64,000 nucleotides of DNA from Bigelowiella natans CCMP2755 (lineage: Eukaryota; Protista; Cercozoa): positions 62,001-126,000 of the forward strand of contig ADNK01000904.1 of NCBI GenBank assembly GCA_000320545.1, written 5' to 3'. Every line of letters begins with the position of its first letter. Within the stretch, counting starts at the first letter, position 1. Below the pieces are notes generated by a model. The model searched no databases and was not told the origin of the DNA. It saw nothing but the letters and a program-made list of their open reading frames with translations. This document shows positions 580-43,774 of this stretch, piece by piece. The translations under genes and the position numbers were made by a program.

Positions 580-3066
580 ATGTCTATATCCCGTGGTTGT
601 GCCTGGCAAATCGGAGGTTGTACCATTATATGCAAAACCAGATAAAATGCGCCGCTGGCTCGATTTTTTGCTGCTGTTGACTGCTTAAAAATCATTCAAG
701 GAATTGTTGGGTGTCTTGGACCTTATTGGAAAAGTCCGGAGTATCTCTTTATGCTCAAAGATGGGAACAGGTAATCATGCATGCTAGAATAAGCAACCTC
801 GTAGAAATTTATAGAATAACCAAATTTGTGACATCATGATCAATAATGTGCGAAGGAACTTGTCAGACCTGGGTTCGTCCCGGGCATCTTCGGTAATCTT
901 CTTGTACTATCTCCACAACTCTATAGCGCAAATTGAAGCGAAAACTATATAATTTTCAGTGCCATTGCGAACACGTATCAAGCATCCCTCCAGCGTCTTG
1001 ACCTAGGTCTATGGTGTGAAATGAAGCATTCTCCAAATCGTTATCGCTTTAAAGTCCTGACAGACGAACTGGTTCAAATTCAAAGCTTTTAGCTGTAAAT
1101 ATTGAATAATGTGACATGTAGTTTAATCTATTAGTTATTTAAAAATGAAAGCAAACGATGTATCTCATTGATTATGGTATCCATAGAGAAATCTAAGATG
1201 TATATTGAACAATAATAGAAGGATATCAGTGAACTTCGATGCCCGTTGGAGTGCCTTGTTCAAAACACAAAAGCCATCTCAACCTTCAAAAATCTATCGA
1301 AGTACAATTACAATACAAACTTGAAATAGCCAGCATTTTTGTACAGTGTTTGGTGCATGTTCAATTTATAATAGTAACTATTCGCATAGGCTGTCCATTG
1401 GGAGCTCTGGATGCTCAACGCAGTTATTACGTTCTTTAGTTGGATACTTGGCACACCTCCCACACCTTAGGTGATAATGATGATTGCCCACGATATTTAT
1501 TACTCTTACAATAACCATATCGACATCTGATGAATGTGTAAACGCAACAATATGTCTGCAGGTCATTCTACGTCCAAGCTCATTTTGACGCAGAGCTAGC
1601 TGTGCTATTGTCCAAATGTAGATCATTGAAACAGCTTAGTTTTGGAGGTGAGAAGAGATAGTACGACAAATATATGATTATCATATAAATTTCGATTTTG
1701 ATTCCCCTTTGAGATCTAATTCAAATATATTATGGGAATTATTCACGCGTTGCAGGAGAGGGTATGAGCGACGACGCTGCCAGACACATCCAGCACCTTA
1801 TCCAGCTCGAGTTAATATTTAAATCTTCTTCCAAAACTTTCGATGAGAATCTCCAAGATTATGAACAGTTCACATGAAAATCATAATAATTTCGCAGATA
1901 TTTAGATGCCTCTGGGAATGACGGTAGCCAACACATTCCTTTATGCCTCACGGATATCGGACTAGGGTAAATAGCAGTAGCAAAGAGGACGCGAAATTAT
2001 ATAACGATCAACTATCTTTTTACACAGACACACACACACACACACACATTTTAAGATAATTTACTCTTACTGGGAAAACGTTGGGTTAACAGATATCTAA
2101 AGGAGTTGAGAAACATGCGAGAGCTTAATCTATACGGAAACTATGGGATCTCAGATGAAGGGTAATAGCGCCAATTCTAGTTTATGCAATAGGCGAATAT
2201 TATCATCTTTGATATTCTCACGTTTACTATTAGGATTCGTTCTGTTCTGAAAGAGATGAAATATTTGGAAAATCTCTGCATTGGGTTGACCATTTGTAGC
2301 CCTTTAGGCAACACGAAAGCTTAACTAATTTATAAACAATGATAGATCTCCAAAGGTGGAGGATTCAACTGTGAAGGCTCTCGTTGATTATGGTAATACA
2401 AAAATCTAAATTTAGAACATGATATATCAAAGTCATTAAATTCGGTATTTGCACTCTATCTCCAGGAATCGCGGCTAAAATAAAGATCTTAGGGTTGTTG
2501 TCTCCTCCAACCATTCTATTTGCTTCTCCAGCGTGTAACAAACATGTTTGCCTTCTTCCTCAATCACCAGATTGCAAGGGTCTTCGATAACGAGCTCAGC
2601 GATTCCATCTCTCCTCAACTTTCCGCTTCTTAGGTAGCACTTTATATTTCTAGAATCAGAATTTACTAGTAGGAAAATCGATATTTCTTTGTTTTCGTAA
2701 CTGAATATAATCAAATTTCAAGGAAGTTGGACTTGTCATACTGTTATCGCGTAAAGGATGATGCTCTAACAAGTCTGAAATCTCTGATCGGTGGGTGAAC
2801 ATAATTAAACGTGTAGACTAGAATGTGGCTGGTTGTAATTTCTTATGTTCAAAGATCGCAAGATTCGGATAAATATGGAGGAAACAGGTCTAAGCTATGA
2901 TGGATGGAATATCGCAGAGGCTATCCTCGGCCATGAACAGGTATCTTTCAGTGCTAAAGATCAAAAGATCGTGATTAATGCAAATGTAAACTGATACACA
3001 AACATTTACATTTGTCTGTTGTAGGTTCAAGACACTCCACAAGCTTGGATATCAATTGGTACCTGA
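580..3066 (+). CDS. Leucine-rich repeat protein (FBXL/AMN1-like), many short introns; 5' end approximate
   Basis: Spliced exons read by hand: AIANTYQASLQRLDL, YLKELRNMRELNLYGNYGISDEG, LKEMKYLENLCIG, KLDLSYCYRVKDDALTSL, ending VQDTPQAWISIGT* (TGA 3064-3066). GT..AG introns of about 50-150 nt. Confidence 0.75.
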
Positions 3067-40847: not shown

Positions 40848-41586
40848 GATCTCCTACGACCAAAAATCATTAAGATCATCATCTTTAGAATTATTGGTGT
40901 ATTTATTTACTATGAAGTTGTTGAGTTATGTTCATTCTCAAGATTAAAACAAATCTAAATGAGGTCATTTTGCCGTACAATGAGCGCTTTTTGGACAGAA
41001 AGGCATGCTTTGCAACGCTAGCTAGAATGCTGCAGGTGACACCCATCTAGCCATAAAAATGCAACATCGTATATGCATGTGCCAAATATGACATTGCAAT
41101 GTGTTGCATATATGCATGCAAAATCAAGTGCGGTTTCCATTCGAGCAAAGTAATGATTGATTATTGTAACGCCCAGACGTACGTACGTTGTGCAAGCCGC
41201 ACGTGCGCTGTGTATGTTGTTACAATAATGTTCATATTGCGTGCGACGCGCACATTAATAAAAATATATGCACATTGTGTACGTCGCACGACACGGCGCA
41301 CATATATACGTGCCATATATACTAGCGCATGTTGACAAGTAGTATGTACATAGAGAACATATGTGCCGGCCAGCACAATGCATGCTGTGGAAGATATTCT
41401 ACAATTCATGTTTAGCTAGATTATCTAGCTGTGCATTCACTTCGCCAGAACACCAGGAACATGTAACAGCTTCGCTGTCAATTCAATGCTCCTTACTACA
41501 TTAAATGTGGCACACATTTGATCTATTTTAGCGAAAATTGGCTTCGATTCAGGATTTTTGGAAGCTATGGACTAGACCTTGCATTA

Positions 41587-42426
41587 CTACTTTCCGGCCC
41601 TCTTGCGTTCTTGGCGACGTTTTCGTCTGATGTGTGTGTAGTAAATGCCACTTTGTTAATTATTTTCGAAAGAAAGCGGATTGATGCTCATTCTCATATT
41701 TTCTGGGTTATAAGTTTTTGACACATAAACAATTAGCAACATTTCCGGTTGCATTACAAAATGGGTATCATTATAGCTATCGTAAGTGATAAACAATTCG
41801 GTATCACTTCATTCTCCGTCTGCGTTTTTTCTTCCATTTTGCCCTCATTCCTCCGCGGACTGTTGTGAACAACGAACAAAAATTTATTTTAACTACATGC
41901 CATTCAGCATTCCTACAATTAGCCAGAAAATATTTCTCTTGAGGCTAGCCGTGATCATATTCATTGTAAAAATGCAAAATTCATAAATCCCATCCCTCCT
42001 AATCCCGAAATATGTACTTTTCAATGCAGAATGAACGATTTCTGGAAGAATAAAGGGATTTTCTCGTTGCGGGCCAACACTAGCACTTCTTGACGCTGAA
42101 GCTTTTCTCTGCGACTCATCGACAAAGACACTGTTGCATGAATGTTGTCCGGGGATGGCAGGGTTTGAGAGGGCATTGGGGTTGCTACTCCTTCCACGTG
42201 GTGAAACAGTCGACGAGAGCGACAATGGCGCGGGACTGAGATTTGATAGGGGAAGGAAGACCGCTATTGCAACCCACAGGAAAATTACCAAAAGCGGGAT
42301 CGGATTTAACCAGTTACTTCCATGAGCATTCTTTGTGAAAGTCGGCCTGGAGGCATGCGTATGGAAAAGAAACACTCAACATGCTGATGAATCAGGATAT
42401 GGAGTGGGCAAATTTGTTTACCTCAT
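41587..42426 (-). CDS. RPL41: Ribosomal protein eL41 precursor with 115-aa signal/transit-like leader ending LKIRGG (exons 42426-42422, 42346-42018, 41859-41808, 41626-41587; 141 aa)
   Basis: Three GT-AG introns join in frame (5+329+52+40 = 426 nt). The C-terminal 26 aa MRAKWKKKRRRRMKRKRRQERKRAGK* match eL41 (human [25 protein letters not shown]). Confidence 0.88.
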
Positions 42427-42535
42427 AATTTTGTAGAAGCAAAGAGATTATTTGCCAATTTTTGAAATGCTTTCCTACCCCCCCCCCTGCATGCTATCCG
42501 GTCAGGAACAGCGAAGGGATTCACGTTATTTGAGA

Positions 42536-42569
<34 letters not shown>

Positions 42570-42780
42570 GATGATGATGATGTTGTTGTTGTTAAAATAT
42601 CACACCATCATTATTCTACATTTGAACGAGTTTTGACTAGTCTAAAACTCAAAATTGATGCTTGAATTTCTAAATTTCTACAATGTCGATGCATTCTGTG
42701 CAAAAATGCATGTGCCACCTTTCTAAAACATTCAAAATTTGGTCAGTCCACAAGGCTAGAAGTTGTGCCTCAAATTTATC

Positions 42781-43774
42781 ACCCAGACAACAACAGAGAG
42801 AGAACGCTGATTGAGCGGCATCACGGCCACAAGACCAAAATGACAGGACAATTCGACGATGTGAGCATTGTTCATTGTTCTGGCGCATGTGGATTTGATC
42901 AACGCTGTGTTGTTCATTGTTCATTGTGCGTTGTTCATTGTTCACTGTTCACTCCGTCGGCGGCTGTCCGCACGGTGTCGATCGGGAAAATGGCGAACCT
43001 GTTGGCTCAAGCGTGCAACGATGCTCATCAACGCTGGCACAATCAGTGGTTGTCAAAGTGGGCTGGGGTGGATCTTGGGTCGGTTGATTCCAGCCAGTCA
43101 GTCCAGTGCCCGGAGGTGCACCTGAACACGCAGGCTAGCAGGGTGCTTTGTCTTTTGGCACACCTCCTTCATTCGTTCAGCTTGATTCTTCCACCCCTTC
43201 TTTTTCTTCCAGATCTCCCCTCGTTCCTTCGACCGTGGCATTGCAATTTGTTCCTTCCGCCAGCGCTGCCCTGAATCACACTCTCACACAATGCGGCAGC
43301 TGTGTTCTTGTGCTTCACTGCGATTGCGCCAGTTGTGACGCCCGCTGACCCGCTAGCCCGCACAGCCCGAACGTGACGTCATCCAGTCATCACAGGTCTG
43401 CCATGTCTTTCGTTTTCATCAACATGAATGATCTTTTCCCCAAAAATTGATGTCTTGTCTGGAATCTCACACAGTGTGTTCACACCAATCTAGCAATGCT
43501 GGCAATGCTGAAATGCGGTCGTCGAGGCGAAGGGAGAGCAAGGCAAACTTGCACATCGCTCGATGTGCATCGGAAGACGTCGCAGAATGTGCTGCGCTGT
43601 CTGTGAGTCCAGCGAAATGGCATCGTCGCTGCATCGGGGTGACAGCAAAATTGCAATGCATCACCCCCACATGCACATCTAGACATGCTGCGCATGGCCT
43701 TGCTAGCTGGCATTCTAGCATTGCCAATGTGTTCTCCAGTTCTCACCGAAAAAATGAATGACAAACTTTGCACA
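42781..43774. other. Extreme TpA-depleted intergenic tract
   Basis: Only 6 TpA in 994 bp, all in CTAG (43135, 43353, 43490, 43679, 43703, 43715). CpG abundant. Confidence 0.92.
42866..42952 (-). repeat. Degenerate 7-bp array (GAACAAT)n on the minus strand
   Basis: tgttcat/tgttcac units at 42866-42880 and 42911-42952. Confidence 0.8.

What the first reader, a model, noticed from the sequence alone, without database searches (positions are those of the whole stretch)
41587..42426. eL41 made as a signal-peptide precursor with a ubiquitin-tail mimic (LKIRGG) immediately before the mature Met
Seen: four exons splice in frame to MRPTFTKNAHGSNWLNPIPLLVIFLWVAIAVFLPLSNLSPAPLSLSSTVSPRGRSS...EIVHSALKIRGG-MRAKWKKKRRRRMKRKRRQERKRAGK*. 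The ORF track misses the eL41 part. Known: eL41 is normally a leaderless ~25-aa cytosolic 80S protein. Ubiquitin ends in LRLRGG, and ubiquitin-ribosomal protein fusions (eL40, eS31) are cut after GG by DUBs. Nucleomorph-bearing algae keep 80S ribosomes in the periplastid compartment (PPC) and import proteins with signal plus transit-like leaders. Inference: this is a nucleus-encoded subunit of the endosymbiont's 80S ribosome. Its leader is Ser/Pro-rich and does not look like a ubiquitin fold, but keeps the DUB-recognition tail, so a DUB-like protease would act as the PPC maturation peptidase and restore the exact Met N-terminus.
Basis: partly seen in the sequence, partly recalled or inferred. 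Interest (0 to 1): 0.87.

Follow-up and report, generated by a model that had tools for sequence, protein, structure and literature searches.

The report
Leader-bearing eL41 precursor with ubiquitin-like tail
The alga Bigelowiella natans makes a second copy of the tiny ribosomal protein eL41 as a 141-residue precursor whose import-type leader ends in a ubiquitin-like LKIRGG right before the mature Met, one case of a recurring leader-end motif that may mark where leaders for the swallowed alga's relic cytoplasm are cut off.

Summary
Assembled RNA from three independent studies, plus raw RNA reads, carries all three predicted splice junctions. An MMETSP transcript ORF (P0244) is the exact 141-residue model. 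The genome is Bigelowiella natans, which has a nucleomorph. The JGI model stops at Met116, so the eL41 part was never annotated.

A separate leaderless eL41 gene exists elsewhere in the genome. The leader has a basic N-terminus, an 18-residue hydrophobic core and an 80-residue Ser/Pro-rich region. It shows no ubiquitin fold.

The [LI]xGG junction is not unique to this gene:
- A signal-bearing ubiquitin gene has RIRGG directly before its Met1.
- A leader-bearing NTF2 keeps L(R/S)GG-S in four otherwise unalignable leaders.

This scan had already noted the same motif on other DNA of this genome (DnaJ, Rae1, VDAC, Elf1, CSE1). I re-tested only NTF2. I found no paper describing the motif.

Periplastid location and cutting after GG by a ubiquitin-type protease are inferred, not shown. 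The eL41 part scores below Pfam's cut-off. Whether the nucleomorph lacks rpl41 could not be tested.

The parts
42427..42527 (-). 5'UTR as far as the RNA contigs reach. The contigs stop at a (TGT)19 microsatellite at 42536-42593, so the true start is uncertain. It contains a 5-codon upstream ORF (MQGGG*) at 42492-42475.
   Evidence: table 8: X4 contig reaches 42527 and X1 reaches 42507; microsatellite. ATG at offset 36; sequence.
42422..42426 (-). Exon 1 coding part (ATGAG): Met1 and the first two bases of Arg2.
   Evidence: joint 42345|42421 in contigs of three studies. P0244 starts MRPTF.
42347..42421 (-). Intron 1, 75 nt, GT..AG.
42018..42346 (-). Exon 2: residues 2-112 (part) of the leader.
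   Evidence: The translation window:42019-42345:- matches P0001, P0002 and P0244 at 100%.
42247..42300 (-). Signal-peptide-like hydrophobic core, residues 18-35, preceded by a basic 17-residue N-region.
   Evidence: the highest Kyte-Doolittle 15-residue window is residues 18-32, mean 2.95. AlphaFold2 helix 17-32, block pLDDT 93. No SignalP run was available.
42019..42246 (-). Transit-peptide-like region, residues 36-111 (it continues to residue 115 in exon 3). Over residues 36-115: 18 Ser/Thr, 9 Pro, 8 Lys/Arg, 4 Asp/Glu. All acidic residues lie in the last 40 residues.
   Evidence: composition. (no confident structure). (no Pfam ubiquitin match at E<=10).
41849..42024 (-). Ubiquitin-tail-like junction motif L110-K-I-R-G-G115, split by intron 2. 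L110 and K111 are at 42024-42019. I112 is 42018 plus 41859-41858. R113, G114 and G115 are at 41857-41849.
41860..42017 (-). Intron 2, 158 nt, GT..AG.
   Evidence: joint 41859|42018 in three contigs and 3 raw reads..
41808..41859 (-). Exon 3: the end of the leader (IRGG) and eL41 residues 1-14. The eL41 Met (residue 116 of the precursor) is at 41848-41846.
41627..41807 (-). Intron 3, 181 nt, GT..AG. It is partly retained in run X1.
   Evidence: joint 41626|41808 in 8 raw reads and three contigs. X1 record 2 spans 41597-41837 unspliced at depth 32 against 70 for the spliced piece.
41587..41626 (-). Exon 4 coding part: eL41 residues 14 (part) to 26, and the stop TAG at 41589-41587.
41478..41586 (-). 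3'UTR up to the poly(A) site.
   Evidence: table 7 (a 22-letter T-run loose end before 41478 in X1) and table 8 (contigs end at 41473-41478).

Best explanation
This is a nuclear gene of Bigelowiella natans for a second, divergent eL41 (also called eS32). It is made as a 141-residue precursor.

Shown:
- The main mRNA joins four exons into one ORF.
- Five further ATGs lie inside exon 2, upstream of the eL41 Met, so from this mRNA eL41 can only be made as the C-terminal 26 residues of the precursor.

Inferred:
- The N-terminal basic stretch plus 18-residue hydrophobic core acts as an ER signal peptide.
- The following 80-residue Ser/Pro-rich, net-positive region acts as a transit-peptide-like sequence.
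- Together they take the protein into the four-membrane plastid complex. Because eL41 belongs to 80S ribosomes, the destination is the periplastidial compartment, where the endosymbiont's 80S ribosomes sit.

More tentative: the leader is removed at LKIRGG|M by a protease with ubiquitin-tail (LxGG) specificity, which would free eL41 with its native Met1. The same compartment would need such an activity anyway, because the leader-bearing ubiquitin precursor has extensions on both sides of ubiquitin.

My odds for each step:
- Precursor translated as modelled: 0.85.
- Sent into the complex plastid or periplastidial compartment: 0.7.
- [LI]xGG is a functional junction motif: 0.65.
- It is cut after GG by a DUB-like enzyme: 0.35-0.4.
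For: - Gene model: all three junctions appear in RNA contigs of three studies and in raw reads, with a poly(A) site. The exact 141-aa ORF is present in MMETSP.
- No shorter form dominates. In X1 the contig with exons 3, 2, 1 and the 5'UTR has depth 157.6, against 60-70 for the 3' pieces. Exon 2 holds five ATGs ahead of the eL41 ATG.
- eL41 identity: all but one of the 27 PDB matches to P0244 are eL41 chains (the other is an eS31, E 1.2), and most align Met116 onward with their Met1 onward. By my count, 17 of 24 residues match Neurospora eL41.
- A leaderless paralogue passes Pfam's cut-off at 24.7 bits.
- Leader features.
- Recurrence of the junction motif, tested here. First, L026, a divergent ubiquitin, has an upstream exon encoding a signal-like start and RIRGG directly before Met1. 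Hopkins et al. report a nuclear ubiquitin monomer gene with SP+/TP+ (PMC3542566). Second, NTF2 in L106 has a 93-residue leader ending HLRGG|S, and three leader-bearing orthologues have RLRGG|S, RLSGG|S and ELRGG|S while the rest of their leaders do not align.
- Context: several periplastid 60S ribosome components were reported missing from both genomes of B. natans (PMC4494063).
Against: - There is no localisation or N-terminal protein data.
- No orthologue of this leader was found in any other species, so conservation of LKIRGG in this particular gene is untested.
- The eL41 part is divergent: Pfam gives 12.5 bits against a cut-off of 22.3.
- From general knowledge, most DUBs grip the ubiquitin body and cut bare tails poorly, and this leader has no ubiquitin fold.
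- eL41 tolerates N-terminal extensions of 8-16 residues in some protists, so exact trimming is not obviously required.
- No leader-bearing DUB was identified.
- Raw-read depth in X21 falls toward the 5' end. I attribute this to 3' bias in that library, but it leaves room for some shorter transcripts.
Confidence: 0.6

Rival explanations
1. The precursor does go to the periplastidial compartment, but [LI]xGG is not a DUB site. It would instead be a sorting or retention element of the transit-like region, or the site of an unrelated processing peptidase. Its likeness to ubiquitin's tail would then be convergent or historical, for example inherited from a polyubiquitin-derived leader.
For: The NTF2 orthologues conserve L-x-G-G-S rather than the full RLRGG, and one has Ser at the Arg position. 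The leader has no ubiquitin body for a DUB to bind. From memory of Hirakawa et al. 2010, which I could not read here, the C-terminal part of the transit-like region decides periplastid retention in chlorarachniophytes.
Against: In two genes the GG sits exactly before the native Met1 of the mature protein (eL41 and ubiquitin). That is what a cleavage site predicts and a retention motif does not. The ubiquitin precursor in L026 also needs cutting after its own C-terminal GG.
Confidence: 0.22
2. The C-terminal 26 residues are no longer a ribosomal protein. An eL41 duplicate was captured as the 3' exons of a secretory or membrane protein, and its polybasic tail now serves another role or none.
For: The eL41 part falls below Pfam's cut-off (12.5 bits) and is less canonical than the leaderless copy at 24.7 bits. 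The 18-residue hydrophobic core could be a signal anchor rather than a cleaved signal peptide.
Against: The match runs collinearly from Met116 to eL41 Met1, with M-R-A-K-W and the K-R-K-R-R core kept. The gene is well expressed in several studies. Divergence is expected for a subunit of the fast-evolving endosymbiont ribosome (my inference). The junction motif links it to other leader-bearing proteins of cytosolic or nuclear type.
Confidence: 0.1
3. The in-frame leader is an accident of a long 5' region. Functional eL41 would come from shorter transcripts or internal initiation at Met116 and stay in the host cytosol.
For: Raw-read depth in X21 is higher over exons 3-4 (about 11-19) than over exon 2 (0-4), and some loose ends at 41859 do not clearly match exon 2.
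Against: The only spliced isoform assembled in three studies contains exon 2 and exon 1 at equal or higher depth. No reads or contigs start inside intron 2, apart from one low-depth unspliced contig. Five ATGs precede the eL41 ATG within exon 2. A 109-codon open exon that splices in frame on both sides is unlikely by chance. A canonical leaderless eL41 already exists for the host ribosome.
Confidence: 0.05

Closest known systems
Ubiquitin-ribosomal protein fusions (Ub-eL40, Ub-eS31; FUBI-eS30), and the extra ubiquitin fusions of B. natans (Ub-actin, Ub-P1)
   Same: A small ribosomal protein is encoded directly after a ...RGG tail and would be released by cutting after GG. In this genome I saw Ub-eS31 (L012), Ub-eL40 (L025) and two Ub-actin genes (L013, L015). 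Ub-P1 is cited from Archibald et al. 2003 via PMC3542566.
   Different: Only the last six or so residues resemble ubiquitin here. There is no ubiquitin fold. The N-terminal part is a signal plus transit-like leader. As far as I know, eL41 has not been described as a fusion partner.
Nucleus-encoded periplastid- or nucleomorph-targeted proteins of chlorarachniophytes with bipartite leaders (for example EFL, eIF1, histones)
   Same: A cytosolic-type housekeeping protein carries a signal peptide plus a transit-like sequence. Several such proteins are predicted or shown in B. natans (PMC3542566; others from my own knowledge of Gile & Keeling 2008 and Hirakawa et al. 2010).
   Different: No paper I could search mentions an LRGG-type end to these leaders. 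eL41 is not among the listed proteins, because the public gene model is cut at Met116.
Canonical leaderless eL41/eS32
   Same: The eL41 part has 26 residues, begins M-R-A-K-W and is polybasic. It aligns from Met1 with solved eL41 chains.
   Different: It sits behind a 115-residue leader. It is more divergent than the genome's own leaderless copy (12.5 against 24.7 Pfam bits).
LxGG-directed papain-like proteases and DUBs that accept tail-only substrates (for example coronavirus PLpro)
   Same: The recognition consensus is a hydrophobic residue at P4 and Gly-Gly at P2-P1, with cutting after GG and no need for a ubiquitin body. This is general knowledge and was not tested here.
   Different: Those enzymes process viral polyproteins or ubiquitin conjugates. 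No such enzyme has been assigned to organelle presequence removal, and none was identified here.
Ubiquitin machinery of red-lineage complex plastids (SELMA, its deubiquitinase, the plastid ubiquitin-like protein PUBL)
   Same: A ubiquitin system, with a leader-bearing ubiquitin-like protein and a DUB, works in the periplastid space during import (PMC5487736, PMC12412216).
   Different: There, ubiquitin is attached to cargo during translocation; it is not encoded as a tail at the end of the leader. From my own knowledge, chlorarachniophytes are reported to lack SELMA.

Membership tests
eL41/eS32 (Pfam PF05162 Ribosomal_L41) | Score at or above Pfam's curated cut-off (22.3 bits) | tested here: not met
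   P0244 residues 116-138 match profile positions 1-23 at 12.5 bits, E 0.15. The leaderless paralogue L001:1498-1572:- scores 24.7 bits. I therefore call the window's copy eL41-derived and divergent, not a certified family member.
eL41/eS32 (Pfam PF05162 Ribosomal_L41) | A peptide of about 25 residues, collinear with eL41 from Met1, with the M-R-x-K-W start and K-R-K-R-R core | tested here: met
   All but one of the 27 PDB matches are eL41 chains (the other is an eS31, E 1.2), and most align Met116 onward with eL41 residue 1 onward; the best E is 0.016. By my count, 17 of 24 residues are identical to Neurospora eL41.
eL41/eS32 (Pfam PF05162 Ribosomal_L41) | Is part of an 80S ribosome | not testable with these tools
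   Needs ribosome proteomics or cryo-EM.
Ubiquitin-ribosomal protein fusion | An N-terminal ubiquitin (beta-grasp) domain | tested here: not met
   No PF00240 match at E<=10. The single-sequence AlphaFold2 model shows only helices 17-32 and 104-109 (this is weak evidence).
Ubiquitin-ribosomal protein fusion | ...R-G-G immediately followed by the first residue of the ribosomal protein | tested here: met
   LKIRGG(110-115) is followed by M116.
Ubiquitin-ribosomal protein fusion | Cleaved after GG by a deubiquitinase | not testable with these tools
   No protein-level data are available.
Bipartite leader of chlorarachniophyte complex-plastid or periplastid proteins | An N-terminal ER signal peptide | tested here: inconclusive
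   There is a basic N-region and an 18-residue hydrophobic core (Kyte-Doolittle 2.95). No signal-peptide predictor was available, and the core is long enough to be a signal anchor.
Bipartite leader of chlorarachniophyte complex-plastid or periplastid proteins | A transit-peptide-like region rich in Ser/Thr/Pro/Ala with net positive charge. For periplastid cargo, acidic residues toward its C-terminal end (criterion recalled from Hirakawa et al. 2010, which I could not read here). | tested here: met
   Over residues 36-115: 18 S/T, 9 P, 7 A, 8 K/R against 4 D/E. All D/E lie in residues 76-115.
Bipartite leader of chlorarachniophyte complex-plastid or periplastid proteins | Localisation in the periplastidial compartment | not testable with these tools
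   Needs GFP fusion or fractionation.
Leaders ending in a ubiquitin-tail-like [LI]xGG (a set seen in this genome, not a published family) | [LI]-x-G-G at the boundary between a signal-bearing leader and a cytosolic- or nuclear-type mature protein | tested here: met
   eL41 has KIRGG|M. Ubiquitin in L026 has RIRGG|M. NTF2 in L106 has HLRGG|S.
Leaders ending in a ubiquitin-tail-like [LI]xGG (a set seen in this genome, not a published family) | The motif is conserved among orthologues while the rest of the leader diverges | tested here: inconclusive
   Met for NTF2, with four leader-bearing sequences in alignment A1.

The most novel reading that the evidence does not exclude
In chlorarachniophytes, and possibly in cryptophytes as earlier scan notes claim, a protease with ubiquitin-tail (LxGG) specificity serves as the presequence peptidase of the periplastidial compartment. 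An [LI]xGG at the end of the leader would then be the long-sought sequence mark of periplastid and nucleomorph cargo. The eL41 and ubiquitin precursors would be the cleanest cases, since both would be released with their native Met1.
Probability: 0.35. Interest if true: 0.9.

Novelty: new variant of a known kind. Interest (0 to 1): 0.78.

Why it matters
- It supplies a candidate for one of the periplastid 60S/80S ribosome components reported missing from both the nucleomorph and nuclear genomes of B. natans (PMC4494063). The public gene model hides it because the model stops at Met116.
- Telling periplastid cargo from plastid cargo in chlorarachniophytes has been called a major challenge (PMC3542566). 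It is not known what removes their leaders. A conserved [LI]xGG junction gives a testable sequence rule and a testable enzyme class.
- If a DUB-like enzyme does the cutting, this would be a new way to mature an organelle-targeted protein. It would borrow the logic cells already use for ubiquitin-ribosomal protein fusions.

Tried and rejected
- Homologues of the leader: the word-based search found only B. natans itself. The exhaustive phmmer search added only a spurious bacterial HNH-like hit (P0003, E 1e-3).
- A degenerate ubiquitin in the leader: no Pfam ubiquitin match and no beta-grasp in the model. I rejected this as far as these tools can see.
- Genome-wide DNA pattern for I-R-G-G-M: 65 hits against 34 for the reversed control. 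After reading all 56 true IRGG-M contexts, only the ubiquitin gene L026 was meaningful. Several hits were one dispersed repeat. L084 looked promising (IRGG-MQ) but lies antisense to another gene.
- A search with the L026 ubiquitin exon was swamped by polyubiquitins and gave nothing.
- Second, leader-bearing copies of eL40 and eS31: none in G000.
- Elf1 returned only a leaderless copy.
- Nucleomorph rpl41: no paper holds both terms. Gilson 2006, Hirakawa 2009 and Curtis 2012 are not held, and there are no supplements. I could not tell whether G000 includes the nucleomorph.
- The bacterial promoter/terminator scan is irrelevant to a eukaryote.
Exons were searched by reference, and the whole protein was searched only through the database entry P0244.

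Full report
**What is in the sequence.** On the minus strand, ATGAG at 42426-42422 is followed by a GT..AG intron. Next comes a 329-nt exon (42346-42018), then a 52-nt exon (41859-41808) and a last coding exon (41626-41587, stop TAG). Exon 2 ends ...A-L-K plus one base. Exon 3 supplies I-R-G-G and then M-R-A-K-W-K-K-K-R-R-R-R-M-K. Exon 4 completes a 26-residue polybasic peptide.

**RNA evidence.**
- I laid four runs on 41300-43300. Contigs from three different studies carry all three joints. One 662-nt contig runs from 41473 to 42527 through every exon.
- A T-run loose end marks a poly(A) site at about 41478.
- Raw RNA reads (X21) add 8 and 3 joint reads for introns 3 and 2. Their depth falls toward the 5' end. 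I attribute this to the library, because 89 of 99 reads have ends that do not fit and nearly all are first mates.
- In X1 the contig with exon 3, exon 2, exon 1 and the 5'UTR has higher depth (157.6) than the 3' pieces (60-70). The leader-containing form is therefore the main one.
- Minor unspliced forms exist. Intron 3 is retained in X1 at depth 32, and intron 2 in X2 at depth 3.4.
- The mRNA has a 5-codon upstream ORF, and five ATGs inside exon 2 precede the eL41 ATG. From this mRNA, eL41 can only be made as the end of the 141-residue protein.

**Identity of the organism and the protein.**
- The exon 2 translation matches JGI Bigelowiella natans model 61119 (P0001), which stops at Met116.
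- The same 90% cluster holds an MMETSP transcript ORF, P0244, that is exactly the 141-residue model.
Exons were searched by reference, and the whole protein was searched only through P0244.
- All but one of the 27 PDB matches to P0244 are eL41 chains (also named eS32); the exception is an eS31 chain at E 1.2. Most align Met116 with their Met1 (best E 0.016).
- Pfam's L41 model matches residues 116-138 at only 12.5 bits, under the 22.3-bit cut-off. The copy is eL41-derived but divergent.
- A second eL41 gene at G000:C3061 has no leader, follows a likely 5'UTR intron acceptor, and passes the cut-off at 24.7 bits.

**The leader.**
- Residues 1-17 are basic. Residues 18-35 form an 18-residue hydrophobic core, the only confidently modelled helix.
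- Residues 36-115 are Ser/Thr/Pro/Ala/Asn-rich and net positive, with all four acidic residues in the last 40 positions.
- There is no ubiquitin domain by Pfam at E<=10 and none in the AlphaFold2 model (weak evidence because it was a single-sequence run).
- No homologue of the leader exists in two very large protein libraries. That is usual for targeting peptides, but it leaves conservation of LKIRGG in this gene untested.

**Is the ubiquitin-like tail more than chance?** I looked for the same junction elsewhere in the genome.
- *Ubiquitin (L026).* Among 73 ubiquitin-domain matches, one divergent ubiquitin monomer (L026, G000:C3106) has ...N-L-E-R-I-R-G-G immediately before its Met1, within one exon. 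Two upstream GT-AG exons, in frame, supply a 44-residue start with a basic stretch and a hydrophobic core. That splicing is my inference. Hopkins et al. do report a nuclear ubiquitin monomer gene with signal and transit peptides (PMC3542566). This precursor also carries 43 residues after its own C-terminal GG. Wherever it goes, an enzyme that cuts after GG must be present there.
- *NTF2 (L106).* Following a lead from earlier scan notes, I read the leader-bearing NTF2 gene (L106). It has a 93-residue signal-plus-transit-like leader ending H-L-R-G-G, followed by S-S-S-M and the NTF2 domain. Three other leader-bearing NTF2 proteins in public transcriptomes end their leaders R-L-R-G-G-S, R-L-S-G-G-S and E-L-R-G-G-S. 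Everything else in the four leaders fails to align.
- *Consensus.* The consensus is [LI]-x-G-G, the classical LxGG of ubiquitin-tail proteases. In host polyubiquitin of this alga the units are joined ...LRLRGG-S-MQIF, so Ser after GG is a natural context here.
- *Pattern scan.* A DNA pattern scan for contiguous I-R-G-G-M found nothing further of note.

**Earlier notes of this scan.** The same motif was reported on other DNA of this genome for DnaJ, Rae1, a VDAC-like porin, Elf1, CSE1, an ankyrin protein and NTF2. I treat these as leads. I tested only NTF2, and my Elf1 search returned only the leaderless copy. So the motif is not new to the scan. What this locus adds is RNA proof of the model, an exact GG|Met1 junction, and a ribosomal cargo.

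**Literature.**
- I found no paper that combines LRGG with nucleomorph, or RGG with periplastid and transit peptide in this sense.
- Known background is that many ribosomal proteins are absent from the B. natans nucleomorph (PMC3542566).
- Several periplastid 60S components were found in neither genome (PMC4494063).
- Separating periplastid from cytosolic or plastid proteins was a major difficulty.
- Red-lineage plastids use a periplastid ubiquitin system with a DUB and a leader-bearing ubiquitin-like protein (PMC5487736). There, ubiquitin is attached to cargo and is not encoded in the leader.

**Reading.** The best explanation is a periplastid-targeted eL41 precursor whose leader ends in a functional [LI]xGG junction. 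Cutting after GG by a DUB-like, tail-specific protease is the most economical mechanism, for two reasons:
- Two precursors would be released with their native Met1.
- The ubiquitin precursor needs such an enzyme anyway.

It remains an inference. The reasons for caution are:
- Most DUBs need the ubiquitin body.
- No leader-bearing DUB was found.
- eL41 tolerates 8-16 extra N-terminal residues in kinetoplastids, Giardia and apicomplexans.
- The motif could instead be a sorting element or the site of another peptidase.

**What could not be done.**
- Whether the nucleomorph lacks rpl41.
- A signal-peptide predictor.
- Any protein-level test.

Noticed in passing
window 42536-42593: A (TGT)19 microsatellite (ACA on the gene's strand) lies right at the 5' limit of all RNA contigs (42507-42527). 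The true transcription start may lie in or beyond it, and the reads tool skipped the repeat.
   Followed up: partly
window 42475-42492 (minus strand): A five-codon upstream ORF (M-Q-G-G-G-stop) built on a G10 run sits in the 5'UTR, 66 nt before the main ATG.
   Followed up: no
window 42985-43241: Run X1 has a spliced contig (joint 43141|43212, GT..AG on the plus strand). It points to a divergently transcribed neighbour gene about 450 bp from the eL41 transcript's 5' end. It overlaps the TpA-poor tract flagged in scan note s1-747199.
   Followed up: no
window 41597-41837 and 41832-42000: There are unspliced RNA contigs. Intron 3 is retained at about a third of the spliced depth in X1, which would stop translation after 14 eL41 residues. 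Intron 2 is retained at low depth in X2. P0002 (152 aa) is a gene call on such an unspliced contig.
   Followed up: partly
L026 (G000:C3106), 1366-1494 minus strand: The leader-bearing ubiquitin has a 43-residue extension after its C-terminal GG. The extension ends ...D-E-I-V-E-P-H-Q, which faintly recalls the I-I-E-P start of eL40. It may be a relic of a ubiquitin-eL40 gene.
   Followed up: no
L014/L027 (G000:C694): One 765-codon open frame holds three ubiquitin units, then a large non-ubiquitin region, then a second isolated ubiquitin tail (...ILHLVLRLRGG-GDDD) deep inside the protein.
   Followed up: no
L039, L042, L072, L079 (G000:C575, C607, C2540, C2777): A dispersed repeat family shares the same short frame ...S-D-E-I-L-C-F-C-R-I-R-G-G-M-V-Q-stop. 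It accounts for part of the excess of I-R-G-G-M pattern hits (65 against 34 in the control).
   Followed up: partly
P0001 (JGI 61119) and P0124 (JGI 34429): Two public B. natans gene models miss half of the story. One keeps the leader and drops eL41. The other keeps NTF2 and drops the 93-residue leader. Leader-bearing genes may be systematically mis-modelled in this annotation.
   Followed up: partly
PDB chain 7ase_D: A eukaryotic eL41 chain deposited with 34 residues (eL41 core at residues 10-33) has a 9-residue N-terminal extension that ends P-G-G directly before the conserved Met. This is probably coincidence but worth a look.
   Followed up: no
G000:C1169:8927-9073: There is a second SUI1/eIF1 match inside a 206-codon open frame. 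It is possibly the known periplastid eIF1 with its leader. The sequence could not be fetched, so its leader end is unread.
   Followed up: no
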